Positions 4,101 through 62,360 of a stretch of DNA of 64,000 nt are shown one piece after another. Under the pieces are notes generated by a model. That model worked only from the letters and a program-made list of their open reading frames with translations. It was not told the DNA's origin and searched no databases. Source of the stretch: Mizuhopecten yessoensis (taxonomy: Eukaryota); assembly GCF_002113885.1 (NCBI RefSeq), contig NW_018406415.1, forward strand, positions 1,645,038 through 1,709,037, in the 5' to 3' direction. The number at the start of each line of letters is the position of its first letter. The stretch's first letter is position 1. Both the position numbers and the translations under genes were made by a program.

Positions 4101-5069
4101 GGTAGTACATATACATGTATCTAATAGTACACCCCTGCGTTTTGTATCCACAATTATTTTTTTAACTTTTGGTAGAGCTTACAGAACCCAACAAGATTGA
4201 ATTTTGAGTTGTATCAAAACTCAATGAGTCAAATTTTTATTTCATTCATTCATTTAGAAACTTAATCTTGAAAGTTTAAGAAAAAAAATAAAAATTGAAA
4301 TACTAAGTATATATATACAAATTATTTTTATTAATAACTTAACTGTTGAATAATTTTCCCATTGAAAGTAACCACTTACTCTAAAAGCTTTGCAGCTACA
4401 TTGGAATTTGTGTTCTGGCTGGGAACGATTTCTTGAAGTTTCAAATAATGAAAAGTGTAAGAATCCAAGGGGCTGTTTTGTACTTGCTTTACATTTCACA
4501 ACCATAATATTCTTGGTCACTCTCTGTACAAGAGGGCCAGTTGTCTCTGTGGCCAGAAGCCAGATGGCTTGTTTGGTATCATTTGACACTTGTAGAGAGT
4601 TCAATACAGAATTTTTGAGTGTCAGGGGATGAGCCTCCTGGTTGCAGTCAATGGCAGCCTTTATATGGGGACATGCATCCTCTTGAGTGCTCAATGGACT
4701 GCTGTGGGAGCAACTTTCAACAAAGCATCTTGCATTCTGAGACAAAATTGTCGGATCAACCACTTGGGCTGGATTTCCATCAAGGTCTTGAACCAAAGGT
4801 AATTGAACAAAGCCTCTGTAATCTGGACCACGATCTCGCAGTCTAACTGAGAAAACTTGAACAGTGGACCCAGTGATAATCTTCACGGCATCAGCACTAT
4901 GGCCTCTCTTTTTCTCTTTTTCCTTGAAGACAACATCACACGTTTTGTTCTTACAGCTGATGCCTCTGGTTCCATTGTAAGTCCCACATTTAGGACATTT
5001 TCTAACACCTCGCAAAGTTGGCTTGCCAAGATCTTCGAACAAAGTTTTCAATTTGTCTGGTGTTGTCAT
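1110..5069 (-). CDS. C2orf42: C2orf42 homologue (uncharacterised zinc-finger protein); multi-exon, 3' end outside window
   Basis: Exons with GT-AG sites and consistent phases: 5069-4380, 3979-3838, 3280-3119, 2442-2305, 1710-1606, 1318-1110 (482 codons). Diagnostic segments: [129 protein letters not shown]. Confidence 0.92.
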
Positions 5070-7414: not shown

Positions 7415-8113
7415 NNNNNNNNNNNNNNNNNNNNNNNNNNNNNNNNNNNNNNNNNNNNNNNNNNNNNNNNNNNNNNNNNNNNNNNNNNNNNNNNNNNNNN
7501 NNNNNNNNNNNNNNNNNNNNNNNNNNNNNNNNNNNNNNNNNNNNNNNNNNNNNNNNNNNNNNNNNNNNNNNNNNNNNNNNNNNNNNNNNNNNNNNNNNNN
7601 NNNNNNNNNNNNNNNNNNNNNNNNNNNNNNNNNNNNNNNNNNNNNNNNNNNNNNNNNNNNNNNNNNNNNNNNNNNNNNNNNNNNNNNNNNNNNNNNNNNN
7701 NNNNNNNNNNNNNNNNNNNNNNNNNNNNNNNNNNNNNNNNNNNNNNNNNNNNNNNNNNNNNNNNNNNNNNNNNNNNNNNNNNNNNNNNNNNNNNNNNNNN
7801 NNNNNNNNNNNNNNNNNNNNNNNNNNNNNNNNNNNNNNNNNNNNNNNNNNNNNNNNNNNNNNNNNNNNNNNNNNNNNNNNNNNNNNNNNNNNNNNNNNNN
7901 NNNNNNNNNNNNNNNNNNNNNNNNNNNNNNNNNNNNNNNNNNNNNNNNNNNNNNNNNNNNNNNNNNNNNNNNNNNNNNNNNNNNNNNNNNNNNNNNNNNN
8001 NNNNNNNNNNNNNNNNNNNNNNNNNNNNNNNNNNNNNNNNNNNNNNNNNNNNNNNNNNNNNNNNNNNNNNNNNNNNNNNNNNNNNNNNNNNNNNNNNNNN
8101 NNNNNNNNNNNNN
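7415..8113. other. Assembly gap (N run)
   Basis: Uninterrupted Ns. Confidence 1.
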
Positions 8114-11500: not shown

Positions 11501-11739
11501 AACAGAGTAAAGCTCCCCGCAAGCACTAAAAGATTCCCAATATAATACATCTATATGGTCTTGTTATCCAACATAGCCGAAACGAACACGGCCGGTTCGA
11601 GCCCCAGCGACGGCAGTCTTTAACACTATTCCTCATCCTACTACAAACGGTGCTGTTGACTCTCCTCATCGAGGTAGGAGAACCCTTGGCGGGGAGTCAA
11701 AGAACCTTGGTTGGTGTTAGAAAAAAAGGGGGGAATAGT

Positions 11740-12148
11740 GATAAGGTAGTTTAATTGGTTAGAGCATTTGTCTAGAGGTTGGAAGCCTCAGGTCCTGGTC
11801 AGTGATGCTGCTAAATTGTCCTCTCCTGTTACAGTGTTGCCTGTGACTGACCCTTATTTCGAGTAGTGTACATGTGTGTATGTTTGGCAAGCTGGATCTA
11901 GCCAGGGACAGTATATACGTTATACGTCCCTGATCTAGCCGAACCTGGGTTGTAAATAGTGTTGTCTTTGAGGGCAAAGACTTTAGAGAAAGGTGGAGGA
12001 ATGTGGTGTACTAGACTGGGTATATGTAAATCATTGGCAATCAGCTAAATATATATAGGTAGATCAATTGATAAAAGCACATCTAGTGTTCGGAGGCCCT
12101 GGTTTCAAATCCTGGTCTGGCAGTGTATTTTTCTTTTCCTGTTTCACA
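11740..12148 (+). mobile_element. Degenerate copy of the tRNA-LTR TRIM
   Basis: Colinear with 34958-35348: LTR1 ends CCTCTCCTGTTACA (11833), then PBS-like GTGTTGCCTGTGAC, internal AACCTGGGTTGTAAATAGT...GGGCAAAGACTT, PPT AGAAAGGTGGAGGAA, and LTR2 from 12002 with B box GGTTTCAAATCC. Confidence 0.7.
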
Positions 12149-12172: not shown

Positions 12173-12682
12173 CAGGTCGGGGAAAACCACTAACTTGCTT
12201 ATCATATGCAAACTTGCATATATTATACGCCAATAGGGGTATGGATTTGTTACTAAAAATAGCCAAAATCACTTTAATCTTAACTTTTTCTAATTGTTTG
12301 TCCAAGTCGCATTTATTCTTTCATGAAACATAATACAAATGCAAAAATAAACTTTATTTGCATGTGGAAAAGTACCAAAAATTTAATTTAAGATGCAATA
12401 CTTCCGGTAAAGTTACATCAAGTTTCTTAAGTAGCCAACGCTTTCAGTCAACATTTTTTAGCAAAATATTATTTACCTTGTCGTAAATTAATGCGATTTT
12501 GAATAATATCTTGCAAAAGCTACTGTANTACCTTGTCGTAAATTAATGCGATTTTCAATAATATCTTGCAAAAGCTACTGTAAAAGCGATTTGGGTTACT
12601 TTTAGTAACAAATCCATACTCCAACTTGCCTATAATAGGCTAGTTTGCATATATATGCAAGTTGGTGGTTTTCCCCAACCTG
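12173..12682. mobile_element. MITE with long CAGG-starting inverted termini (hAT-like)
   Basis: CAGGTCGGGGAAAACCAC..AACTTGC..TATGGATTTGTTACTAAAA versus TTTTAGTAACAAATCCATA..GCAAGTTGGTGGTTTTCCCCAACCTG. No clean TSD seen. Confidence 0.65.
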
Positions 12683-13070: not shown

Positions 13071-16000
13071 ATGGACTTTATATCTGTGTATCAAAATTTG
13101 ATCTATCTGGTCATCGCCAGCCATCTTTTGATTGTTGCTGATGCTACTCTCTCCAAGGGACAGAAGAAGAAAAAGGTAACAGGTCTAAACAAAACAAATG
13201 TTTTTTTTACAGGTTTTACATTCTATAAAAAAACCTAAGGATTGTTAATAATGCAAAATGTATGGGATTACATGAAATTGTATAATAACCCTAAGACCTA
13301 CTTCAGGACTTTGAAGATAATAAATCATATGATTTTTATATAGACGTCTACTTGACGCATGTAACCTGTTTCTATGATTTGGAAAGTTGAATGGGCCATT
13401 TTCCAGTTGAGAGCAACATGTACATTGTACACATATTTCAATCAGCTGTTTTCTGTAAATCTGTTTTAAATGTTCTCATATCGGGATATGTTCCTACTCT
13501 TGTTGTTGATAATATGACCCATTGCCCCCTATGTTTATGCTTCATATTTCCCAAACTGAAAGCAAAGGAAATATGAAATTCAGACATGTGATCTGATCAA
13601 GTAATATCTCAGATAATCTGCATAAAACATACTAAAGCAAAATTCTCATACGAAACCAAAATATGACACTGCAGTGATTTTGGGTAATCAGATATTTGAT
13701 TCCTGTACATATGCTTTCCTGTGGGACTCACCAACTTTTTGAGAACCCATTGTATCTCTCTTTTGTTCTAGGACTAGCCTGAATTTTCTTTTTACAAAAA
13801 TCACTGCAATGAATTATTTAAAACCAATGTTGTATATATGATCATGATCATGTGGCACCATAGTTTTTGTCATGTCATGATTATTACTATTGTCTTTGGG
13901 AGTTGTCTATTCCTTCGCTTGTGCGTTTTTATTCACTACATCAGCATTTCTATTTACTTCCTGGGAGCACAATATGGAAAAATTGTAGAGTGCGATATTT
14001 GTCGATGGATTTTCGTAGTTATTTTATCATTCCTATATATACTTGACAGAACTGTCCAGGGAAAGAAAGCTATACAAGAATTTTCTATCTTACTTCACAT
14101 TATTTCATGTGCATAACGTCACAATATATGGGACATCATTGTGATATCTGAGCTAATTCTGGTGATTGGAATGAGAGAAAAATAGTCTTTCATGTCCAGG
14201 GGTGTAGGATAGAGAAAAATATGCTTTAATGTCCAGGGGTGTAGGATAGAGAAAAATAGTCTTTAATGTGCAGGGGTGTAGGATAGAGAAAAATAGTCTT
14301 TAATGTCTAGGGGTGTAGGATAGAGAAAAATAGTCTTTAATGTCCAGGGGTGTAGGATAGAGAAAAATAGTCTTTAATGTTCAGGGGTGTAGGATAGAGA
14401 AAAATAGTCTTTCATGTCCAGGGGTGTAGGATAGAGAAAAATAGTCTTCATGTCCAGGGGTGTAGGATAGAGAAGAATAGTCTTTAATGTCCAGGGGTGT
14501 AGGATAGAGAACAATAGTCTTTAATGTCCAGGGGTGTAGGATAGAGAAAAATAGTCTTTCATGTCCAGGGGTGTGGGATAGAGAAAAATAGTCTTTCATG
14601 TCCAGGGGTGTGGGATAGGGAAATTCCAAACTCCCGATTTTCAAATTGGTGCAAAACCCTCGGCAAGCTTTGGTCTTCACCCAATTTGAAAACCACATGG
14701 GTGGAATTTCCCTGTCTTACACCCCTGGACATAAATTAATCTAATACTCTTTGGTAGTGTGAGAAAATAGGATAGTAGTTGACCATCATGATAGATATTT
14801 TGCCTTCTGATGTGAAACTTTGGCAAAATATACCTGGTAAACATTTGTTTATTAATTATATAACAGAATGTCAGATTAATACCGCCAGCACATGTTCTGA
14901 ATACTCTGTTTTGCTTCAATTGTAAAGGTTCAGGCGACAGACCACAGCAGCAGGAATGTATTTGACAGAGACCTTGTGACAGAGAATATCAAAACGAAGG
15001 ACATCCTGCATGAATACAAGGCTTACTGTGAGATGGAAAAGGAGATCAAGAGGTTTCAGGGTAGAACATTGGCCTACGTCACTCCTGTAAGTGGACTCCA
15101 TGTGTAATTACTATACGGGAAACTTTCACCTTGTGAAATATTTCCCCTTCTGTGATAAAATCCATATTTGTCAAGTGTTCAAAACGTTTTGCTGTTCAGA
15201 GTACAAGTAGAACTAAGAGACGGATATTAACCATATCTGTTCGGAAGCTCTCTCAGGTGCTGGGGATTCAAGATTGTACAAATGGAGGGGCTGATGAGCG
15301 GGGCCAAAAAAGGGGTAATTTGGCCATATTGCTTTAAGCAACTTCTTCTCTAGAACTAAGTGATGGATATCAAGCAAGCAGAAATAATATGTATAATAAG
15401 CTGTATGCTAATATTCATCATCACTAGGGAGGGCATATCACGTTAAACTGAAGCAACATTTTCCCAGGTTATATGAAATACTTGATAATAGCATTTGGAA
15501 TCAATCAATGGTTGATTAAGTCATTCAGTTTCTTGTTAAATGTTGTTGAGTGTGGGAATCTGTTAATTGTTGTGTAACTGAATAAAAAGTGTATAAATGA
15601 ATAAAGATGAAATACTTCAAAGATTATTTTAAGGTTAAATTTGTTTCAGGTCAATAATGAATATGTGGGCGTTTATTGGTCTTATAGAAAAGATCCTTCA
15701 GTATGTTTAAAATTTTACTTGGTACATGTATAAAAAAAATGCTTGACTTTGCATGAAAATGCATAAGTGGTTCACGATCAAACGAAAGCAAGATTCTAGT
15801 ACAGCTTCCCCTCCCAGGTCGACATTTGGATCTGCCATGCACTTTCTTTGCAAAAAAAATCATTTTTTGTATGGCTTTTAGTGGAACAATCATGGTTACA
15901 CTATAGCCAAAAGATTTTCACAGAAGTTTTCCTACGTGTCACCAGTGTGGCTACAAGTCAAGCGCAAACCTGGAGGTGCCTTTGTCATAGAGGGGAAACA

Positions 16001-19000
16001 TGATGTGGATCACGGTAACTATGATATATATTGTGGTTGTCTGTTGTTATATTCATGAGATAGTATGTCATTGAGAGATCATGTGACTTTGATTACAATA
16101 TTGAATAAGACTGTCATTGAGATATATCACATGATGAAGATCATGTGGCAAGGGTCTGTCATTGAAAGATCAAGTGACAAATGGCTAAATATTTGTCGTT
16201 CAATTAACTAAAATCCATTAAACCTTAACAACTGTTTAGTAATATTTTACTAAATTTAGTTCTTGAAAAAAAAATTGTGTCCATAAAATGTCTTCACGCT
16301 TAACCTCTCGCACTGAAAAAGCCACATCTGCATCTCTGGATGTTGGCAACCCTGATTTACACTCACAGTCTGTCATTACCAGATCACATGTATGCATGAT
16401 ATTTATCATGGTTCGACCACAGGGGTTTGTTACAAATGTCTGAAATACATATACTGATATGGGTCACAGCACACATAACTGTGCTGTGACCCATGCGGTT
16501 TGACTTTTAAGTAGAGATTAATCATTACATATCTGCTTTATATTTGTTGTGAAATATCTCAACTTTTCTCTATAGAATATTTTACTGACTACCTATTTTT
16601 ACATTACAATAGCTGCATTACTTTCTGATATACAACACAGTGCTGATGTTGCAGCAGCAGCACTAGATGTTATACTGAGTTACTGAGCACAGCTGTCATT
16701 TTCCTAGATATCTGATCCATGTAATGGTGTTACTATATATAGTTGTATACTATCGGTGGTTGTTTTATGACTAGATATCTGATCAATGTAATGGTGTTAC
16801 TATATATAGTTGTACTATCGTTGGTTGTTTTATGACTAGATATCTGATCCATGTACTGGTGTTACTATATATAGTTGTACTATCGGTGGCTGTTTTATGA
16901 CTAGATATCTGATCCATGTAATGGTGTAACTATATATAGTTGTTACTATCGGTGGTTGTTTTATGACAAGATATCTGATCCATGTAATGGTGTTACTATA
17001 TATAGTTGTATTATCGGTGGTTGTTTTTTGACTAGATATCTGATCCATGTAATGGTGTTACTTTATATAGTTGTATTATCGGTGGTTGTTTTATGACTAG
17101 AGATCTGATCCATGTAATGGTGTTACTATATATAGTTGTATCATCGGTGGTTGTTTTATGACTAGATATCTGATCAATGTAATGGTGTTACTATATATAG
17201 TTGTACTATCTGTATGTTTTATGACTAGATATCTGATCCATGTAATGGTGTCACTATATATAGTTGTACTATCTGTATGTTTTATGACTAGATATCTGAT
17301 CCATGTAATGGTGTAACTATATATAGTTGTTACTATCGGTGGTTGTTTTATGACAAGATATCTGATCCATGTAATGGTGTTACTATATATAGTTGTATAC
17401 TATCCGTGGTTGTTTTATGACTAGATATCTTATCCATGTAATGGTGTAACTATATATAGTTGTACGATCGGTGGTTGTTTTAGGACTAGATATCTGATCC
17501 ATGTAATGGTGTTACTTTATATAGTTGTATTATCGGTGGTTGTTTTATGACTAGAGATCTGATCCATGTAATGGTGTTACTATATATAGTTGTATACTAT
17601 CCGTTGTTGTTTTATGACTAGATATCTGATCCATGTAATGGTGTAACTATATATAGTTGTTACTATCGGTGGTTGTTTTATGACAAGATATCTGATCCAT
17701 GTAATGGTGTTACTATATATAGTTGTATACTATCCGTGGTTGTTTTATGACTAGATATCTTATCCATGTAATGGTGTAACTATATATAGTTGTACGATCG
17801 GTGGTTGTTTTATGACTAGATATCTGATCAATGTAATGGTGTTACTATATATAGTTGTACTATCTGTATGTTTTATGACTAGATATCTGATCCATGTAAT
17901 GGTGTCACTATATATAGTTGTACTATCTGTATGTTTTATGACTAGATATCTGATCCATGTAATGGTGTTACTTTATATAGTTGTATTATCGGTGGTTGTT
18001 TTATGACTAGATATCTGACCCATGTAATGGTGTTACTATATATAGTTGTACTATCGGTGGCTGTTTTATGACTAGATATCTGATCCATGTAATGGTGTCA
18101 CTATATATAGTTGTACTATCTGTATGTTTTATGACTAGATATCTGATCCATGTAATGGTGTAACTATATATAGTTGTTACTATCGGTGGTTGTTTTATGA
18201 CAAGATATCTGATCCATGTAATGGTGTTACTATATATAGTTGTACTATCTGTATGTTTTATGACTAGATATCTGATCCATGTAATGGTGTTACTATAGTT
18301 GTACTATCGGTGGGTGTTTTATGACTAGATATCTGATCCATGTAATGGTGTTACTATATATAGTTGTATTATCGGTGGTTGTTCTATGACTAGATATCTG
18401 ATCCATGTAATGGTGTTACTATATACAGTTGTATACTATCGGTGGTTGTTTTATGACTAGATATCTGATCCATGTATTGGTGTTACTATATATAGTTGTA
18501 CTATCGGTAGTTGTTTTATGACTAGATTTCTAGATCATATTACTTAATAGAGATTTTTGTAGAAATATTTCAAGTAAGTCCTGGGCCCGTATTCATGAAA
18601 CCACTCTCATGCTAAAGCATGGACTTTGTGCTCAAGCCTAATTTCTTGTTCCAGTTATAAATTATAGCTGAATTCTGTTTTCAATATTTAAATTTGACTT
18701 TATGATCGTTGACATGATTTATGTGAGTTACTAGAAAGCTTGCTTGAGCATGAGAACGGTTTCATGAATACGGGCCCTGGACATCTGTTTCAAAATTTTG
18801 ATGAGTCCTATTTCTAAGAGATATAGAAACAGTGGGCGAGTTCCACAGGAAAAGCATGAATCCAGGGCCAGTATATTCATGAAACTTTTCTCGCCCTCAA
18901 GCATGGATTCTGTGCTCAAACTAATTTTTCTCGTAACTTGCTTAAATCAGGTGGTACTAGTCGAAAAGTCAAATAGAAACTACGAAAATGGTGTTTGACT

Positions 19001-29903: not shown

Positions 29904-30139
29904 CCATTAATGGTCACTCTAAGTTATGGTGGACCACCGTTAATGGTCACTCTAAGTTATGGTGGACTACCGTTAATGGTCAGTCTAAGTCATGGTGGAC
30001 CACCGTCAATGGTCACTCTAAGTTATGGTGGACCACCGTTAATGGCCACTCTAAGTTATGGTGGACCACCGTTAATGGTCACTCTAAGTTATGGTTGACC
30101 ACCGTTAATGGTCACTCTAAGTTATGGTGGACCATTAAT
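29904..30139. repeat. 33-bp minisatellite, about 7 copies (probable RDM1 3' UTR)
   Basis: Unit CCGTTAATGGTCACTCTAAGTTATGGTGGACCA. Confidence 0.95.
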
Positions 30140-33300: not shown

Positions 33301-36014
33301 ACGGAATGGACAACGGAACAAGAAGAGTATCTATACCTATCAGACAACATAATCATGATGCTCAACATGTATCAAATGATGTTATTAAAAATAAGTTATT
33401 ATATATACAGTAACGTAATTCCCTTTTTGAGAGAAAGATAAATTAGATTTTCCCCCTTCTCCATCCTTGACCTGACGAGGCCCAGTCAATGATTTACAGT
33501 ACTTAAAATATAAACTAGAGATTTAAGACTGGTAGCATGACTGGACTTCGTGTGAAGCGGATTAAACACTGAATATCCATAACTGGTTCTATCATAACTC
33601 CCATTTCATTATCCTAAAAAGCCCCCTCGTTTAAGCTAATTTTTAAGCACTATATGGGTGCTAATAATGGTGAATAAGGCACTGAAACCATATAACTCTT
33701 GCGCATATTTGAGAACTATATCCAATGACTGTCATATTCAAACGGAATTAATATTTGTTATATGAAGAAAGAAAATGGTTAGATTCGTGTTATTTCTTAC
33801 CAGTTTGACAGAAGTGGACCATCCATTAAAGCCTAGGTATTGGTTTGCCAGTTCCTGACACTTTGTAAAGTGTAGAGTGGCTCTACTTATTTCCTTCTTT
33901 CTCTTGGCTGTGGAAATCTGGAACACCACAACAACATACGAATGTATATCGTTTGGTAGTGCTGTGTATCGATAGGGTTGTGACGATATGATACGTGTCA
34001 CGATACATGGGTCACCATACCATACGCATTGTGATACTTGTCACAATTTTTTGTATAAATCTGTTACCATAATTTTCCTTGACTTGAAACGAACCTTGAC
34101 ATGAAACGAATCTGAAGTGTTTACCAGGTTTAATGTGTTTATCAAGTGATCCATCTCCTAGATTGTGTAAGATTTTAATTTTTGAAATAATTGGTTTTTT
34201 TTGGTGATAGATCAAGAAGAAAGAAATGCATGCTTTTTTTAAAATGAATTTTGAATGATGGTAATTAACCACTCTAAAATGGCAGTAACCTGTACGAAGG
34301 TTTTTAAAAGTATCACGGTACTATCGGAGGATGGGACATTGCATCTGCACTCAAGATATGACACGATTCACTGATACATCTTGTGTTTCTGTTAGCGCTA
34401 AGGGTTTGGTAGGAAGGCATTTTTTTTGTTATTATTTTGGAAAATATTTGTACCTATGGTTAAGCTTATATAGAGCAAGAGTTTAACAGTGCATGCCACT
34501 AAATGTCAATGTTAGGCACAAATATATAGGGAAGGTAGGGTTTGCGGAAACACAAGATTTGTTTTTATTTGGTCTGATGTATCTCAGGTTTACATACCTT
34601 GCACTCATTCCCTTGAATAATAAGTCGGCTTTTTAAATTGTCCTTTGCCCTTTTAGCACTCATAGCCAGATAAAACGTCACAAAGGCATAGTATCCATTC
34701 TGCTCGTTGTTACCACCAGGTGGTGTTGACTTGTCTTTGTCTGTGTCATTAAGTGCTATTCCCACCCTACAGTTGAAAGGAGGTGTGTCTGGCTCAGAGA
34801 CTGGTCGAGAAATTTTTATACTTGCCGGACACAGACGAATACCATATACTGGGCCATATGTTGTGAATAGTTGATAGAACTTATCCTGTAAATCAAATGT
34901 TACATATATATATATCTCTGAGATTTATGCATGGTTAGAATGATTGTCATATATGTGTGCTGCGGAACTGGACAGTGGGTCGATTGTTGGCCACCAGATA
35001 GCTGAATCGGTAGACGTAGAGCGTGATCTGTCTAGAGTATGGAGGATCCTGGGTTCGAACCCTGGTCTGACCGTGCAGCTTTCCTCTCCTGGTACAGTGG
35101 TGCCTGTGACCAAGCCATGTTTCAAGCATTTGGTGTATGCTTGGCAAAGGGGATACCCAAACCTGGGTTGTAAATAGTTGTGTCTTCTGGGGCAAAGACT
35201 TAAAAAAAAGGAGGGAGGAATGTAGCGGAATTGGACTGGGTCGATCGTCAGCGACCGGATAGCCCAATTGGTAGAGCGTCCATCAAGAGTTAGGAGGGTC
35301 CCGGGTTCGAACCAAGGTCTTGCTGTGCATTTTGCCTCTCCTGTTACATGTGTTACGCTACAATAATACCTGACTATCAGATAGAAAATCAGACAATTTA
35401 GATTTATTGTTGACGAGACAATATCATTTACATAAAGATATATACTGGTACCTATATAACACATACAATATTGTACCATGATCAAATTTGCAAGCTGATC
35501 GAGACTCCATGCAGCGGGATTCAAACTTCTGACCTTAGCTCAGATATCTAGGCGAACGCTCTACCCATTGAGCTACCCGGCCGATGGCGATCCAATTCCA
35601 CTTCATATGTATATGTCAGAGACGTATACAGTCATTAGTTATAATGCATCTCCTGGCATAATGTGGATATTTATATATTATGTTTACTTTTTACGTCATG
35701 TATGTATTTCTTTCCATTTACAAAAATACCATACCTGTTTTGTGTTATCAGTGATCTTTTTTCATTATGTTCAAAATGTTGGAATCAATTCCCTAACCTA
35801 CAAATTGTGTAGAAAAAAAATGCTGCCTTTGAAAGTGAAACTGAAAGCAAACAAGGCCTAATTATGCATGTGTACATTCTGTATATTTTAAGCAAGTTAT
35901 GAATCTTACCAGTATCTCAGCTTCTTCCATCCAAGGTATACCGGTTATATATAAATTCTTGTTGTTTCCCTCTGGGCGAATAAACTCTAAAATCTCTAGG
36001 CTTACTGCTGACAT
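30358..36014 (-). CDS. RDM1: RAD52 motif-containing protein 1 (RRM + RAD52-like motif); 6 exons, about 316 aa
   Basis: Exons 36014-35910, 34885-34598, 33917-33801, 32705-32570, 31113-30926, 30474-30358; phases consistent. RRM (NLYITGI..LFTTYGPVY..GYYAFVTFY), KCQELANQYLGFNGWS, DGLG, KAKKLSYQRAVEDAFSRVLLIVLNNGKVSVE, acidic tail. Confidence 0.9.
30756..30847. mobile_element. Tiny TTAA-flanked MITE, second copy
   Basis: Same TIR and core (AACCTTTGAATTGGAAGAGTTCAAATGTGT) as 26029-26119. Confidence 0.75.
31210..31700. mobile_element. Non-autonomous DNA element with hairpin-rich termini
   Basis: TAGAATCTTTCACCCCCTTGGGGGTGAGATAGGGGAATCTCAACCC modules; about 300 bp colinear with 54670-54960. Confidence 0.7.
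34958..35348 (+). mobile_element. TRIM (miniature LTR retrotransposon) with tRNA-derived Pol III promoter in each LTR (Helenus-like)
   Basis: LTR1 34958-35096 (TG...ACA), PBS TGGTGCCTGTGACC from 35098, PPT AAAAAAAAGGAGGGAGGAA ending 35220, LTR2 35221-35348 (TGT...ACA), and TSD TGTG on both sides. A box TAGCCCAATTGG (35260); B boxes GGTTCGAACC (35052, 35304). Confidence 0.85.
35500..35605 (-). mobile_element. Solo-LTR-like fragment of the same TRIM family
   Basis: The minus strand reads GTGGAATTGGATCGCCATCGGCCGGGTAGCTCAATGGGTAGAGCGTTCGCCTAGA...GTTTGAATCCC, like the LTR head. Confidence 0.5.
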
Positions 36015-36282: not shown

Positions 36283-39200
36283 ATGTCTGCGCCCGTAGAC
36301 AACACATTCATCCGAGAATTAGAACTGAAAAACGAAGAGAAACTTAAAATCCATCAATTAGAAGTAGGCGATGTTGGTTGTGTTGTATGGGATGCGGCGC
36401 TAGTTATGTGTAAATACCTCGAGACGGCAGACTTTGATGGCGGGGAATCGTGGCGGGGACTAGATGTAGTGGAATTGGGGGCCGGTACAGGTGTACTTGG
36501 TGTGTACGCTGCCGTTTACGGGTTCGTACACACTCACAGTTGCTACAAACGTTCAAAAATGTATTTACTAGGGTGTCGGGTAGTTTCTCACTAAATCATG
36601 TTTTCTGCAGGTTGTTTCGCCATGAAAATATAGTTAAGGGAGATCTTTTTTCTGGTGTAATGTCGTTTCGGTAACAAGCCGTTTCGGTAACAAGACGAAA
36701 GTCGTTCCGGGATTTTTTAGGGTTGTTTCGGGACATGTCAAAAGTCGTTTCGGGATTTTTCATTTTATTTCTTCTGTAAATACCATTGTCTTTTTTCTTT
36801 AAACATATTTTATCGACAAATAATTTGAACAATGAATTGGGTAAAAGTTATTAGAATGTATCATAGCCTTAGGCTACATTTGCCAGAGACGAATAATACG
36901 TCTCTGCATTTGCCATTACATGAAGTGAATATATATAATATTCAAAGACACAAATCCACAACATAAAAAAACATTGTTCAAAACATATTCCTGGATTTGA
37001 TGAATATTGGACCACATGTCTAAAACATATTCCACGTTTTTATTTTCGTGAAATTTAACTTCATATACTATGATATAGCAAAAAAATGCTTAAAACATAT
37101 TGTTTAAATCAATGTTAACTCATTCGTCTCTTAATGTCAATAATGGAGAATAGAGTGAATTGAAATCATGATATTACATACAATAGCAAACAAGGAACCT
37201 ATCAATAACGAAAGAAATTGAATGTTAAATTTCATAAGTTCCTCTCTGTATTTGATAACACACTGGCAATCGGGTAAAGGTTGGTAGGTATCCCCTCTAG
37301 CAATCTGGTAATACTAACGATCCCAAGCACGGGTAGGTCGTGACACAGGTCATACAGGACTTTATTTGAAATGGGAGAGAAATGTAATCTATAAGTGAAA
37401 ATTTTATATGTCCCGAAACGACTTGATCAAGTCCCGAAACATCGTGTTACCGAAACGACTAGCATTCTTTTTTCTAACTTGTAACGTTACTTAGCATTGT
37501 ATGGCTTTTACGATAAAATGTCAAGTATTCCTTAAATCTTTTATTTTATAAGACTTACATTCTCACTCCAGCATGCTGCGTATCCATGGCCAACTAGATA
37601 TTCTCACAGCATACCTTTAGTTCGTCCGGTAAAACAATTGTGTATGAAGCATAAAACACTAAGATTGACATCATATTTTATGATATAAAAATATCGATCA
37701 TATAATACAATCTGTATTTATAAGGGCAAACAATCCACGTGCAAACATGATTGGCCTGCATTCTATTACCAGTGTTCAATATATGACTCTGACTTAAAAC
37801 AAAGCTTTCATGACAAGCTGTTATTGAACAAACTATGATGATCAGGTAGTTACGTTACAGGAGAGGGAAATGTTTGCTTAAGATGATTAAACTTGTCGCA
37901 GATATTATTGTACATACGATTATGATTGTCTTCTATTCCGTCTTTGCGTATTGCAGAGTTATCTTCTCTTTGGAGCAGGTATTGATTGTTTTGTCATTGG
38001 TTTGTGTGAGAAAATTTCGTCGTTTTCTCAAAAATTGATGACGTTGCTCTCACAAACAAGTGACGTAACAATCAATACCTGCCCCCAAGAGAAGATAACT
38101 CTGCAATACGCAAAGACGGAATAGCTTTGCGTAAGAGGAAATTTCTCTTTAGCTCAATCCATAAAACAGACAACTAGATAGCTGGGGGTTGCTCATGGTT
38201 TTTCATCAAACTGCAACACACTATAGCTCTCTTTTCTTTTATATTTATGTGATCATTTGTTGCAAATCACTTATTTGTGACAATTTAAATTTGTGAATAG
38301 ACAGTAATAAATTCATTCCATTTTTATAAGCAGTGGAATATTTCAGAAATTCAAAAACATATTTTTTGTTAGTGGGGGGAACGTTTTCTCAATACCAGGA
38401 AGTAACAGATTACCAAATCAATGTGTTGATTGTTTTATAATTTGACATTCGATTCTGAAGCCCCTGCTGTTTGTTCATTTTCTTCAAGTTCTAAAAATGA
38501 ACTTAAAAGAATAATTTTATGGTTTCCTGTTGAATTACTGTTTAAGTTAACTCCTCTGGCAGCATACACTACTTTCACTTGTGCTGGTTATGACACACTG
38601 GTTCAAACACTGCAGTATCTTGCAACCCTTTAAAGAAAAAATAGTATTTAACGGAAAAAATCATTAGATTTGTTCTGATGACTGCACAGAAAAAATCAAA
38701 TTCCTGAGAGGTGTGATCGTGGCTTACAGTTTTTCTCCCTTTACAGTGCTAACGTAACAATAACCGATTTACCCGAGTTTCTGCCACTGATGAATCTAAA
38801 CATCGATACCAACCAACATCACATAACAGGGAGAGCCGTGGCTCAGTCCTTACAGTGGGGGGAGGAATCGCTGGGACGGACCGTCGAATATGTTCTCTTG
38901 GCAGACTGTATATACTACGAAAAGGTAAGTTTGTCAACATCAAATTATATTACTATAAGTTCTTGTATTGCCTGCTCCGTTGTTATAGCCTGCAAACTTA
39001 TCATGTTAAGGAAAAGTCTGCAAATTGCCTTCTCCGCCAAATTGCTTGGGTATTTTCTGCAACATAAGAACTGTTATGCGGCGCTCACACAGTGCCAATT
39101 ATGGCTCCCGTTTGAAATCAGACAGCGCTACGACACGAAAAGCGAAAAAGTCCGATTACTATCCTCAATGATCTGGAATGTCCTATCATTGTCTGAACGC

Positions 39201-46571: not shown

Positions 46572-49233
46572 TTATGCGTCACATCCGGTCTGGTCGGACT
46601 CGATGAACTGAGTAGTGTCGATCCCCAGACTTGATAATCGGCTGTACAACTTTGACCTCTGGCGGCGGGTCACACCATTTCTCTCTCTGGACATAATCCA
46701 AGCCAGTTCTGAAATAGTAAACATGTTATGATAATACAACATAGATATATCCCGCACTAAACAACAGAATTAGTACATTGAATTTGGATTTGTCAACTAC
46801 ATCATGTAATGCAGAAGTTTTGAACAGGTGGTGATGTGTCGATTTTGATAAAAAAAAACATCAGGAAAATTGTAAAATGTCAATATTGCGTTTAAAAGTA
46901 GCTATTTGTAATGGAACTTCATTTAATACAAAATTGGAAAACAATGTATCACATCGTTAAGTCGATACACCACAACAACCAACGACAACAATGCAAATCA
47001 CTAACGTTAAATGAATAACGACAACAGGTATTAAACGGACACAAACAAGAAACAGAAAGAAATGAAGCATCCTCAGCTCTTCAAACTAGAGGAGAGACCA
47101 GTTACTCCGGAAGTGTAAACGTTTCATGCACTACATATGACATCCGTCATTATTTCTGTCGTAAGAATCAAAGAAAGTCTATAGGTCACCAACGATCTAA
47201 GATACGACTAACAATTCCTGGTATGATGTAAAATACTGTAGTCCCTTTACCTGGAACAGTTCATGCTGACAACCCTACAATTCATTAATGTGCATTTAAT
47301 CGTTTCAGGTGGAAAACCCTGTACATATTGTTTATTGATCAACTGGATATGATTTATCTATTATACAATACATAGAACTGGCTCTGTATAAGCGGATTGA
47401 CTGTGACATGTAAATTAAGTACGCACCGGAGGCCGGAATGTAACTGCTGAGGAAAGGAAAGCTAACTATCGCGAAATAGATGTCATCATTTGTCACAAAG
47501 TTTAGTGAGTTGCCAAATATGTAAATGTCTGTCGTAATTGTCTTGGAATGTGGTGTTATTATTATGTATGTGTAGTTAGTTTTAAATTTGTGTTATCATT
47601 TTGTAAGTGTTCATTTTATAGTCTAAACATATGCCATTATCGTCTTTTGTGTGTCATATTGTCCAAATACATATATGTATATGTTGGGCTAGGTAAAAAG
47701 ATGCCGCTCACTGGGATACTTATGTATTTTGATGATGGGATGTACTAACTGGTAATTTGTGTAAATACGATATTGAAGTTTTCTTCTATCATCAGTATTT
47801 CACAGTTAAATCGCAAACATATTTTTTCTTTGGTGTCTGTAAATATATATCTACGGAGTTTATAGTTCATGGTATGAGTATTTTCTGTGTAATTAATTAC
47901 GCGCTATCTTTGGTGACTGCGAAGATAGCGATGTTAAATCCTCCGCAAATATTACCAGCTGTACAGTAGTATAATTTCACATGGAATGGCAAATTAAGGC
48001 AGCAACAACGATATTTGTTCATTCAGTGTAAATTATTTCAATGAGCCTCAGTGCATTATAATTTTGTCTGGGTACTTACCAACGTGCGTGAATCCATATA
48101 CGTCAGAACACGAGTACACGATGGAGTAGTTGTCATAGTCTGTGTCTATGACGTAGTAGTTCCCTGATGGTAGCCCTGGTAACAAAGAAACATCAATATT
48201 ACTGTATAGAGGGTTACATTCGCTGACGTTTAATTTCACCCGTTTTTGCCCTGTGTAATGAGAGTGAATTTATCATTACAGCGAATATAAGTAAACATCA
48301 TGACATACATAGTTATCAAATGGGAAGGGCGAGATTAAACTAAGCGAAAATTGTACCCATGGGCGAAGGGCGAAAGTTTGCCTGAGCGAAAATTTCCCGG
48401 TTTATATATCCAGGATATTATATATATGTGAGTTTGAGATATCCACTCTTTATAATGATAAAGACGTAATGGTTCAGGAATACTTAGTCTGCTATCTTAG
48501 TCAGTGGTATTACAATGCATTCGTTCTTTCAATTACTTGAATTAGTTTGATAACCGTCTTTAAAATCAAACAAGCATTTAAAGTTTTGAATACTTGTTGG
48601 AAAGATTCTGTTACAGTAATAGAAGAAAGCATTCGCTCACTATTTGTATTCTGATATTATAATCTGCCGCGGCATGTCTTTTCAAAACATCAGGGCCCGT
48701 ATCCCATGAAACTGTTCTCATGCTCAAGCATGAATTTTGTGCTTAAGCCTAATTTCTTGTTTCGTTAAAAAATTAATAATGAAATCTTATTTTGTCAATG
48801 ATATGGAAAGAAATTGAAGAGATTTAAAGCCAAATGCTGTTTTCAATGTTTACATTTAACCTTTTGATCGTTTGGCATAATTTAAGCAAGTTACAAGAAA
48901 GTTGGTTGGAGCACAAAATCCATGCTTGAGCTTGAGAACAGTTTCATGTATACGAGCTCTGATGAATCGATCTGACAAACGTAACTGTAGGAAAGACGGA
49001 TCTCGTTGCAGAGTCGTGTTTCTGGTCTTCCTCGATACAAAAGGCACTAGTGAAACGAACATACCAGAAGGAATCGAATTTACAAGGAGATGGCAACAGA
49101 GGCACGGGAAGTGATGAACATTAGAAAAGCAGAGTGTTTTGAATAGTGGACAGTGTTACTGGTGCCGTCTGTGTCGGAGAAGATCACTACCACGATCTCA
49201 AATTAAAGATCTTCAAGCCTCCCCCCCCCCCCC

Positions 49234-60529: not shown

Positions 60530-61157
60530 CAAACAAGAGGCCCAATGGGCCTGCATCGCTCACCTGGTATTAATCTCACACTTGTAATCTGAAAAGTGGA
60601 CAACAATACAGCTACAGACAGAAGAATATCAGTGTGTGATTATTATAAGATTTAAACATATGACGCCTGTGACCTTGAATGTCGATCAAGGACAAGGTTG
60701 AAGGTGGGTCAAGGTCATTCATTTGAACAAACTTGTTAGTCCTTCATCCCAGCATGCTACAGGCCCAATTTCAGTACCCTTTGCCTTTTGGTTATTGAGA
60801 AGTGGTTTGAGGATTTTACGAAATTTGACCCCCGTGACCTTGAAAGTGAGTCAAGGTCATTCATTTTGACAAACTTGGTAGCCCTTCATCTCAGCATGCT
60901 ACAGGCCCAATAGCAGTACCCTGGGTCTTTTGGTTTTTTAGAAGAAGTTGTTTGAAGATTTTAAGACATTTGTCACCTGTCACCTTAAAAGTTGGTCAAG
61001 TTCATTCATTTGAACAAACTTGGTAGGCCTTAATTCCAGCATGCTACTGGCCAAATATCATCAGCCTGGGCCTCATGGTTATTGAGAAGAAGTTGTTTAA
61101 AGTAAAAAGTTGACGCCGGGCGGACGGACGACGGACCAATTCACTTGGCCCTTAAAA
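60530..61157 (+). mobile_element. Helentron-associated non-autonomous element (HINE / pearl-like) with about 150-bp internal tandem repeats
   Basis: Starts AAACAAGAGGCCCAATGGGCCT..CGCTCACCTG (hairpin). Three copies of GTCAAGGTCATTCATTTGAACAAACTTGGTAG..CAGCATGCTACAGGCCCAA, a GGAC microsatellite near 61120, and ends TTCACTTGGCCCTTAAAA. Confidence 0.7.
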
Positions 61158-61368: not shown

Positions 61369-62360
61369 ATTCTTCGTACAGTATACCTGTCAACAAGGTG
61401 GATCACATTCTACGTACAGTATACCTGTCAACAAGGTGGATCACATTCTACGTACAGTATACCTGTCAACAAGGTGGATCACATTCTACGTACAGTATAC
61501 CTGTCAACAAGGTGGATCACATTCTACGTACAGTATACCTGTCAACAAGGTGGATCACATTCTACGTACAGTATACCTGTCAACAAGGTGGATCACATTC
61601 TACGTACAGTATACCTGTCAACAAGGTGGATCACATTCTACGTACAGTATACCTGTCAACAAGGTGGATCACATTCTACGTACAGTATACCTGTCAACAA
61701 GGTGGATCACATTCTACGTACAGTATACCTGTCAACAAGGTGGATCACATTCTACGTACAGTATACCTGTCAACAAGGTGGATCACATTCTACGTACAGT
61801 ATACCTGTCAACAAGGTGGATCACATTCTACGTACAGTATACCTGTCAACAAGGTGGATCACATTCTACGTACAGTATACCTGTCAACAAGGTGGATCAC
61901 ATTCTACGTACAGTATACCTGTCAACAAGGTGGATCACATTCTACGTACAGTATACCTGTCAACAAGGTGGATCACATTCTACGTACAGTATACCTGTCA
62001 ACAAGGTGGATCACATTCTACGTACAGTATACCTGTCAACAAGGTGGATCACATTCTACGTACAGTATACCTGTCAACAAGGTGGATCACATTCTACGTA
62101 CAGTATACCTGTCAACAAGGTGGATCACATTCTACGTACAGTATACCTGTCAACAAGGTGGATCACATTCTACGTACAGTATACCTGTCAACAAGGTGGA
62201 TCACATTCTACGTACAGTATACCTGTCAACAAGGTGGATCACATTCTACGTACAGTATACCTGTCAACAAGGGGGATCACATTCTACGTACAGTATACCT
62301 GTCAACAAGGTGGATCACATTCTACGTACAGTATACCTGTCAACAAGGTGGATCACATTC
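61369..62360. repeat. 38-bp minisatellite, about 26 nearly identical copies
   Basis: Unit ATTCTACGTACAGTATACCTGTCAACAAGGTGGATCAC; one internal substitution seen at 62273. Confidence 0.98.

What the first reader, a model, noticed from the sequence alone, without database searches (positions are those of the whole stretch)
34958..35348. Miniature LTR retrotransposon whose LTRs contain a tRNA-type Pol III promoter
Seen: two direct repeats of 139 and 128 bp bounded by TG...CA, each with tRNA A- and B-box sequence. A PBS (TGGTGCCTGTGACC, close to the complement of the tRNA-His 3' end) starts 1 nt after LTR1, a purine tract abuts LTR2, and there is a 4-bp TGTG target duplication. The whole element is 391 bp and non-coding. 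Established: plant Cassandra TRIMs carry 5S sequence in their LTRs, and I recall tRNA-bearing TRIMs being described as Helenus, so the class is probably known while this family may not be. Inference: a SINE/LTR hybrid transcribed by Pol III and mobilised by a Gypsy-type partner (4-bp TSD). Three copies in 64 kb imply high abundance; standard pipelines would mislabel it as tandem SINEs or tRNA pseudogenes.
Basis: partly seen in the sequence, partly recalled or inferred. Interest (0 to 1): 0.8.

Follow-up and report, generated by a model that had tools for sequence, protein, structure and literature searches.

The report
Old Helenus tRNA-LTR mini-retrotransposon copy
This 391-base stretch is a worn-out copy of Helenus, a tiny non-coding LTR retrotransposon with tRNA-like repeats that was described in bivalve molluscs in 2024.

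Summary
There are two direct repeats of 139 and 128 nt, both running TG...CA, and each has a tRNA box A and box B. A tRNA-His-like primer-binding site starts 1 nt after the first repeat. A 19-nt purine tract abuts the second repeat, and TGTG flanks both ends.

The repeats are only 77% identical (K2P 0.28), so this is an old, dead copy. No tRNA is predicted in either repeat.

The class is published: Helenus (Kojima 2024, PMC10886601), with 51 families in pteriomorph bivalves, 4-bp target duplications in animals, and tRNA-His primer sites shared with Gypsy elements. Pieces of the published scallop consensus sequences match this copy almost exactly. For example, the first 26 nt of Helenus-1_ArIr-LTR match 25/26 at the start of the second repeat.

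Flanking exons place the host near scallops (best named hit Pecten maximus, 85% aa). A second element of the same family and two further LTR remnants lie in the window.

Pol III transcription and Gypsy mobilisation are inferred from the literature and were not tested here. The scallop-type LTR joined to a His-type internal region matches no scallop family that Kojima lists, so this is probably an unnamed family of a known kind. Interest is low.

The parts
34954..34957 (+). 5' target-site duplication, TGTG
   Evidence: Read directly. It is identical to 35349-35352. The 4-bp length matches animal Helenus (Table S1).
34958..35096 (+). 5' LTR (139 nt, TG...CA) with a tRNA-like core. Box A is at 34999-35010 and box B at 35052-35061. 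It has no run of four or more T.
35098..35111 (+). Primer-binding site TGGTGCCTGTGACC, lying 1 nt after the LTR. It is the tRNA-His complement with one extra T.
   Evidence: The tRNA-His 3' end and the Helenus and Gypsy-39_CGi PBS table from Kojima Fig. S2C were read. There is no ungapped match to the canonical complement. The same variant occurs at 11835 in the second element.
35097..35220 (+). Internal region (124 nt, non-coding). In order it holds the PBS, hairpin 1 (about 35107-35146), the motif AACCTGGGTTG, hairpin 2 at 35182-35199, and the PPT. It has no run of four or more T.
   Evidence: Folding. Homology to the internal region at 11834-12001 (76% identity). The hairpin-2 block matches Helenus-4_PeMa-I at 18/20.
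35202..35220 (+). Polypurine tract AAAAAAAAGGAGGGAGGAA, abutting the 3' LTR
   Evidence: The junction AAGGAGGGAGGAATGTAG, as in published oyster Helenus-2 internals joined to an LTR start, is exact and unique in the window.
35221..35348 (+). 3' LTR (128 nt, TG...CA). Box A is at 35260-35271 and box B at 35304-35313. A TTTT run lies at 35330-35333, downstream of the tRNA-like core.
   Evidence: Its first 26 nt match the Helenus-1_ArIr-LTR consensus at 25/26. The box-B block matches 25/28 and the D-arm block 20/23.
35349..35352 (+). 3' target-site duplication, TGTG
35472..35604 (-). Solo-like LTR of a related Helenus family (tgaagtgg...catggtaca), with no clean TSD. It is the only copy with a weak Rfam tRNA hit (15.2 bits, below the gathering score of 29).
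11727..12146 (+). Second element of the same family. It consists of a leader-deleted LTR (11727-11833), the PBS TGTTGCCTGTGAC (11835), an internal region (to 12001) with an insertion of about 39 nt that itself forms a hairpin, a PPT, and an LTR (12002-12146).
11546..11726 (+). Remnant of another Helenus directly upstream. It has an LTR 3' part ending cctactaca at 11645, a His-like PBS cggtgctgttgac, an 81-nt internal region and a PPT. With the element at 11727-12146 it forms an LTR-I-LTR-I-LTR cluster. The 5' limit is uncertain.

Best explanation
This is an ancient, inactive copy of a Helenus element. Helenus is a terminal-repeat retrotransposon in miniature whose LTRs derive from a tRNA (class TRIMp3), here in a scallop-like bivalve.

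The sequence shows these things directly:
- the LTR-PBS-internal-PPT-LTR anatomy;
- TG...CA ends and a 4-bp target duplication;
- box A and box B in each LTR;
- homology to named Helenus consensus sequences.

The working of active family members is inferred from the published model, not tested here:
- RNA polymerase III starts at the tRNA-like core of the 5' LTR, directed by the internal A and B boxes.
- It reads through the T-poor remainder of the LTR and the T-poor internal region.
- It stops at the T run behind the tRNA-like core of the 3' LTR.
- The RNA is packaged by a Gypsy-superfamily element.
- The partner's integrase inserts the TG...CA-ended DNA and makes a 4-bp duplication.

This particular copy has since accumulated about 23% differences between its LTRs and can no longer be functional.
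For: - **Anatomy and statistics:**
- **Published class definition:** (PMC10886601). It gives 51 families in Pteriomorphia including Pectinidae, 4-bp TSDs in animals, bivalve PBS types including tRNA-His, and Gypsy-39_CGi sharing the His PBS.
- **Homology to published consensus sequences, from supplement look-ups:** the 14-mer tggactgggtcgat from LTR2 occurs only in Helenus-1_ArIr-LTR and Helenus-2_PeMa-LTR. A 19-mer around box B occurs only in Helenus-1_ArIr-LTR.
- **Homology, searching the other way:** consensus pieces match the window at the expected positions with 0 matches expected by chance. The scores are 25/26, 25/28, 20/23, 18/20 and 17/20, and 18/18.
- **A second element of the same family** has the same part order and the same PBS variant.
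- **Host:** flanking exons are closest to Pecten maximus (85% aa). This fits the scallop-type LTR.
- **T runs:** there is no run of four or more T in the 5' LTR plus internal region of either element. The window background is 9.3 such runs per kb per strand. A T4 or T5 run lies at the homologous site of both 3' LTRs.
Against: - The LTRs are only 77% identical and differ by an 11-column indel, which is unusually diverged for a recognisable intact element.
- The PBS is not a perfect tRNA-His complement. It has one extra T, so there is no ungapped match. The host tRNA set could not be checked.
- Neither LTR is called as a tRNA, so 'tRNA-type' rests on the boxes and on homology.
- The TSD lies in TG-rich sequence (tatatgtgtg), which makes a 4-bp match somewhat less surprising.
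- No autonomous Gypsy element lies in the window.
- No other genomic copies could be fetched. Two metagenome scans found nothing. 41 kb from related ENA contigs had no match.
- Whole-length identity to the published consensus sequences (about 82% for LTR2 against Helenus-2_PeMa-LTR) was counted by eye only.
Confidence: 0.9

Rival explanations
1. Two neighbouring copies of a tRNA-derived SINE (SINE2), or tRNA pseudogenes, separated by unrelated spacer and mobilised by a LINE.
For: Each repeat has tRNA A and B boxes. A third tRNA-like copy lies 120 bp away in the opposite orientation. tRNA-derived SINEs are common in bivalves (general knowledge).
Against: - Neither repeat ends in a poly(A), simple-repeat or LINE-like tail.
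- Both repeats run TG...CA and share a roughly 35-nt non-tRNA leader that is 25/26 identical to a published Helenus LTR.
- The 'spacer' starts with a PBS 1 nt after repeat 1 and ends with a PPT touching repeat 2. It is homologous to published Helenus internal regions and to the spacer of a second in-window element.
- A single 4-bp duplication flanks the whole unit, not each repeat.
Confidence: 0.04
2. A local tandem or segmental duplication of a tRNA-like sequence, with chance PBS-like, PPT-like and TSD-like features.
For: The window is rich in tandem arrays. The LTRs are diverged, as an old duplication would be.
Against: The same composite order recurs 23 kb away in different flanks. It also recurs in published consensus sequences from other bivalve genera. 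Purine runs of 19 nt or more are rare, with 3 in the window, and one sits exactly at the LTR2 border. Consensus pieces have 0 expected chance matches.
Confidence: 0.02
3. A Helenus-derived element that the host has taken over, for example as a Pol III-bound insulator or promoter element upstream of the METTL21D-like gene, rather than neutral debris.
For: The element and the solo LTR lie 680-1330 bp upstream of METTL21D-like exon 1. The A and B boxes are still intact in both LTRs despite 23% overall divergence. The literature suggests SINE-like regulatory roles for TRIMp3.
Against: There are no conservation data, because non-coding sequence of the nearest available relatives does not align. Survival of the two short boxes can be chance. 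The rest of the tRNA-like core has decayed beyond detection.
Confidence: 0.04

Closest known systems
Helenus TRIMs of pteriomorph bivalves (Kojima 2024, Biology 13:119, PMC10886601), LTR lineage Helenus-1_ArIr / Helenus-2_PeMa (scallops) and Helenus-1_SaGl / Helenus-2C_CGi (oysters)
   Same: - LTR of 128-139 nt with the same leader, tRNA-like core, T run and ...ctctcctgttaca end.
- 4-bp TSD and total length of about 350-400 bp.
- The 3' half of the internal region, with the AACCTGGGTTG motif, the hairpin before the PPT and the PPT AAGGAGGGAGGAA.
- A His-type PBS, as in Helenus-1_SaGl, 2C_CGi, 4_PeMa, 5_PeMa, 4_ArIr and 4_MiYe.
   Different: - In the two scallop families with this LTR type, the internal region carries a tRNA-Lys PBS (ttggcgcccaac). 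Here it is His-type.
- The PBS variant TGGTGCCTGTGACC is in none of the published consensus sequences (look-ups found 0).
- The 5' half of the internal region (hairpin 1) has no obvious published counterpart.
- The copy is heavily decayed.
Cassandra (plants) and Ajax (nemerteans): TRIMs with 5S rRNA-derived LTRs
   Same: Same design principle: a TRIM whose LTRs carry a small-RNA-gene Pol III promoter (TRIMp3). These elements are also found as tandem LTR-I-LTR-I-LTR arrays.
   Different: Their promoter is of 5S type (box A, IE, box C), not tRNA type. They make 5-bp TSDs. There is no sequence similarity, and Rfam finds no 5S here.
tRNA-derived SINEs (SINE2)
   Same: A tRNA-derived head with A and B boxes, a short non-coding body, and dependence on an autonomous partner.
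   Different: SINEs have no LTRs, PBS or PPT. They end in LINE-derived or A-rich tails and make TSDs of variable length through target-primed reverse transcription.
biv-TRIM (Satovic et al. 2019, PMC6934838)
   Same: A TRIM of bivalves that also occurs as solo repeats and tandem forms.
   Different: Its terminal repeats are 202-218 bp and its internal domain 77-80 bp. It has no canonical PBS, its PPT is GGGGAGA, and no tRNA-like repeat content is reported in the passages read.

Membership tests
Helenus (TRIMp3, tRNA type) | Short non-autonomous LTR element with no coding capacity (published range 311-1263 bp) | tested here: met
   The element is 391 bp. The only long ORF across it (34925-35524, minus strand) has no Pfam hit above its cut-off.
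Helenus (TRIMp3, tRNA type) | Two direct LTRs ending TG...CA | tested here: met
   The LTRs are 77% identical.
Helenus (TRIMp3, tRNA type) | tRNA-derived sequence in each LTR with a conserved box A (TRGCY...YGG) and box B (GGTTC) | tested here: met
   Both boxes are present in both LTRs. A full tRNA is not detectable, as the paper reports for most families.
Helenus (TRIMp3, tRNA type) | PBS complementary to a tRNA directly after the 5' LTR | tested here: inconclusive
   The position is right, and 7 + 7 nt match the tRNA-His complement around one extra T. There is no ungapped match. The host tRNA-His was not available.
Helenus (TRIMp3, tRNA type) | Polypurine tract directly before the 3' LTR | tested here: met
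   A 19-nt purine run abuts LTR2.
Helenus (TRIMp3, tRNA type) | 4-bp target-site duplication (animal Helenus) | tested here: met
   TGTG on both sides of the finding. It could not be verified for the other in-window copies.
Helenus (TRIMp3, tRNA type) | Sequence homology to named Helenus families | tested here: met
Helenus (TRIMp3, tRNA type) | Transcription by Pol III and mobilisation by a Gypsy partner | not testable with these tools
   Even the describing paper only infers this. No Gypsy element lies in the window.
SINE2 (tRNA-derived SINE) | Single tRNA-derived unit with a LINE-derived or A-rich 3' tail and its own TSD of variable length | tested here: not met
   There is no tail at either repeat end, and one 4-bp TSD flanks the pair.
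Cassandra / Ajax | 5S rRNA-derived sequence in the LTR | tested here: not met
   No 5S match in Rfam. The boxes are of tRNA type.

The most novel reading that the evidence does not exclude
This family is a modular recombinant. A scallop-type Helenus LTR, elsewhere joined to a tRNA-Lys internal region, is here joined to a tRNA-His-type internal region with a PBS variant not yet recorded.

All bivalve Helenus internals, whatever their primer, appear to keep a short hairpin just before the PPT. The stem is like gtcttcg/cgaagac with an RGGR loop. The stem co-varies between families:
- gtgttcg/cgaacac
- aaattcg/cgaattt
- aactcg/cgagtt
- gtctttg/caaagac in the second copy here

This hairpin would be a cis signal by which Gypsy partners recognise these Pol III transcripts, a question the describing paper leaves open. 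The covariation was read by eye from the published consensus sequences and from two copies here. It was not tested formally.
Probability: 0.35. Interest if true: 0.4.

Novelty: new member of a known kind. Interest (0 to 1): 0.18.

Why it matters
It matters little beyond correct annotation. The element shows that Helenus copies, solo LTRs and tandem clusters are scattered through this scallop-like genome. Decayed copies escape tRNA finders, yet they would confuse SINE or tRNA-pseudogene annotation.

Two small points could interest transposon specialists. The first is the swap of primer type on a conserved LTR. The second is the apparently co-varying hairpin before the PPT. It might be the handle by which a Gypsy partner recognises a Pol III transcript, and the 2024 paper says that mechanism is unknown.

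Tried and rejected
- **tRNA and RNA family scans.** ARAGORN found 0 genes and Rfam found 0 at gathering scores. Only the third copy gives a weak tRNA hit.
- **Metagenome scans for further copies.** Two scans found nothing: one with an LTR leader plus box A pattern, one with a PPT/LTR junction pattern.
- **Orthologous or empty-site comparison.**
  - The Pecten maximus METTL21D isoform is not on record for a DNA look-up.
  - The Logan contig holds only 368 bp upstream of the gene.
  - Relatives are about 75% identical even in exons and do not align outside them.
  - The test was therefore not possible.
- **Harvesting Helenus copies from related ENA contigs.** 41 kb gave no match to HMMs built from the window. 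A tRNA-like repeat in L005 is unrelated.
- **Host identification.** It reached only 'near Pectinidae, not P. maximus'.
- **biv-TRIM.** Considered and rejected, because its dimensions differ and it has no PBS.
- **A TGGTGCCGT site at 49160.** It looked like an LTR end plus PBS but has no Helenus context.
- So there is no whole-length alignment to them and no formal covariation count on the hairpin.
Full report
**What is there.**

Window 34958-35348 (+) reads as follows:
- LTR1, 34958-35096, 139 nt, tgctgcgg...ctggtaca.
- One base, g.
- TGGTGCCTGTGACC at 35098-35111.
- A non-coding internal region running to 35220 and ending AAAAAAAAGGAGGGAGGAA.
- LTR2, 35221-35348, 128 nt, tgtagcgg...ctgttaca.
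- TGTG immediately before the unit (34954-34957) and immediately after it (35349-35352).

The two repeats find each other with blastn E 1.3e-17. They are 98/128 identical with 11 gap columns. The differences are 16 transitions and 14 transversions, giving K2P 0.28.

Each repeat has a box A (TAGCTGAATCGG, TAGCCCAATTGG) and a box B (GGTTCGAACC). A combined box A-spacer-box B pattern hits only these two places in 64 kb. Only three purine or pyrimidine runs of 19 nt or more exist in the window, and one is the tract touching LTR2.

There are three caveats:
- The LTRs are far more diverged than a young element's would be.
- LTR1 carries about 9-11 extra bases behind box A.
- Neither LTR is recognised as a tRNA by ARAGORN or Rfam.

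**What it is.**

The class was described by Kojima (Biology 2024, 13:119; PMC10886601). Helenus elements are TRIMs whose LTRs contain a tRNA-derived sequence with conserved A and B boxes. The paper reports:
- 51 families in five orders of pteriomorph bivalves, including Pectinidae;
- 4-bp TSDs in animals;
- bivalve PBS types that include tRNA-His;
- PBS similarity to Gypsy elements only (Gypsy-39_CGi for His).

Look-ups in the paper's consensus file link this copy to named families:
- The 14-mer tggactgggtcgat of LTR2 occurs only in Helenus-1_ArIr-LTR and Helenus-2_PeMa-LTR.
- A 19-mer around box B occurs only in Helenus-1_ArIr-LTR.
- The LTR end ctctcctgttaca occurs three times in the file, and the two passages shown are the Helenus-5_PiIm and Helenus-1_ArIr LTRs.

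Short pieces of the consensus sequences, searched the other way, hit the window exactly where expected. Nothing was expected by chance for the first four, and 0.01 for the last:

| Consensus piece | Match in window |
|---|---|
| First 26 nt of Helenus-1_ArIr-LTR | 35221-35246, 1 mismatch |
| Box-B block | 25/28 |
| D-arm block of Helenus-2_PeMa-LTR | 20/23 at LTR2, and 20/23 at the third copy |
| Pre-PPT hairpin of Helenus-4_PeMa-I | 18/20 and 17/20, in the two in-window internal regions |
| PPT/LTR junction AAGGAGGGAGGAATGTAG | exact |

By eye, LTR2 is about 82% identical to Helenus-2_PeMa-LTR over its whole length.

**Other copies in the window.**

Profile HMMs built from the copies and searched back with nhmmer find five LTR-like segments at two loci.

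A solo-like LTR lies at 35472-35604 on the minus strand. It has tg...ca ends and no clean TSD (cata against atat). It is the only copy with a weak tRNA score (15.2 bits).

A cluster lies at about 11546-12146:
- an LTR remnant ending cctactaca;
- an 81-nt internal region with a His-like PBS and a PPT;
- a leader-deleted LTR;
- g followed by TGTTGCCTGTGAC;
- a 168-nt internal region, 76% identical to that of the finding, with an insertion of about 39 nt that itself forms a hairpin;
- a PPT;
- an LTR ending tgtttca.

This second element has the same part order and no SINE tail. It also shares the extra T in the PBS. That T is therefore a trait of the family, not a private mutation.

**Primer-binding site.**

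The complement of the Aplysia tRNA-His 3' end printed in the paper is TGGTGCCGTGACCAGG. The site here matches 7 nt, then has an extra T, then matches 7 more. There is no ungapped match.

The published scallop His-type sites also carry one extra base, at a different position (GCCGTTGACC, GCCGTAGACC). The host's own tRNA-His may therefore differ. No tRNA gene is in the window, so this stays open.

**Host.**

The window is a eukaryotic sequence of about 35% G+C.

Exon 1 of a METTL21D-like gene starts at 36283, 935 bp downstream of the element. Its best named relative is Pecten maximus at 85% aa. Oyster and ark-shell proteins are at 62-63%.

A C2orf42-homologue exon lies at 4254-5069.

The host is therefore a pteriomorph close to scallops, but not P. 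maximus itself.

In Kojima's table, the two scallop families with this LTR type have tRNA-Lys internals. The combination of this LTR type with a His-type internal is listed only for oysters (Helenus-1_SaGl, 2C_CGi). The family here is probably unnamed, while its kind is fully known.

**How it works.**

The sequence shows the anatomy of a product of reverse transcription and integration. The steps below are inferred from the Helenus and Cassandra model and from established retroelement biology:
- Pol III initiates at the tRNA-like core of the 5' LTR.
- The transcript carries the PBS, the internal region, the PPT and the upstream part of the 3' LTR.
- It ends at the T run behind the 3' core.
- A Gypsy partner supplies Gag, reverse transcriptase and integrase.
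- tRNA-His primes the minus strand and the PPT primes the plus strand.

The distribution of T runs fits this. Neither the 5' LTR nor the internal region of either in-window element has a run of four or more T. The window background is 9.3 such runs per kb per strand. Both 3' LTRs have T4 or T5 at the homologous site. With two old copies this is only suggestive. Since the published consensus LTRs carry the T4, active copies must read through it in the 5' LTR.

With K2P 0.28 between its LTRs, the copy is tens of millions of years old at any plausible rate. It is dead.

**Side observation.**

The internal regions here and in the published consensus sequences share an order: PBS, a variable hairpin, the motif RRCCTGGGTTG, a short hairpin, then the PPT.

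The stem of the short hairpin differs between families in a base-pair-preserving way, and its loop stays RGGR:
- gtcttcg/cgaagac
- gtgttcg/cgaacac
- aaattcg/cgaattt
- aactcg/cgagtt
- gatcttcg/cgaagatc
- gtctttg/caaagac in the second copy here

This was read by eye. In the passages searched, the paper does not mention a hairpin. This could be a cis signal for the partner element, but it was not tested formally.

**Verdict.**

The class is already published, and this is an ordinary, decayed member.

Noticed in passing
window 11546-12146 (+): A tandem Helenus cluster with the layout LTR remnant - internal - LTR - internal - LTR. The two internal regions are different, so it is either an insertion next to or into an older Helenus, or recombination between two families. 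No TSD could be assigned.
   Followed up: partly
window 35472-35604 (-): A solo-like Helenus LTR in the opposite orientation, 120 bp from the finding. It has tg...ca ends but no clean 4-bp duplication. It has the best-preserved tRNA-like core in the window (Rfam tRNA 15.2 bits, below threshold).
   Followed up: partly
window 35182-35199 and 11964-11981 (+): A short hairpin just before the PPT. It matches the corresponding block of published Helenus internals, and a C-G pair is replaced by T-A in the second copy. Across the published families the stem appears to co-vary around an RGGR loop.
   Followed up: partly
window 36283-36520 and 38790-38930 (+): Exons of a METTL21D-like lysine methyltransferase gene (Pfam Methyltransf_16). 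The Helenus element and the solo LTR lie within about 1.3 kb upstream of its start codon, on the promoter side.
   Followed up: partly
window 4254-5069 (-): A large exon of a C2orf42 homologue (zf-tcix domain). Its best relatives are 83-86% identical ORFs on unnamed ENA assembly contigs.
   Followed up: partly
window 14174-14623, 16704-18536, 29907-30134, 60704-61102, 61369-62360: Several minisatellite arrays with periods of 37, 65, 33, 145 and 38 bp. The 38-bp array (26 copies, 99% matches) is open in three reading frames and produces spurious long ORFs with meaningless Pfam hits.
   Followed up: no
window 7415-8113: A run of 699 N, either an assembly gap or masked sequence. Single N bases are at 12528 and 31252.
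   Followed up: no
L005:17840-17920: A contig from a related mollusc-like ENA assembly carries a different tRNA-like repeat (box B GGTTCGAGGC) without recognisable Helenus parts.
   Followed up: no
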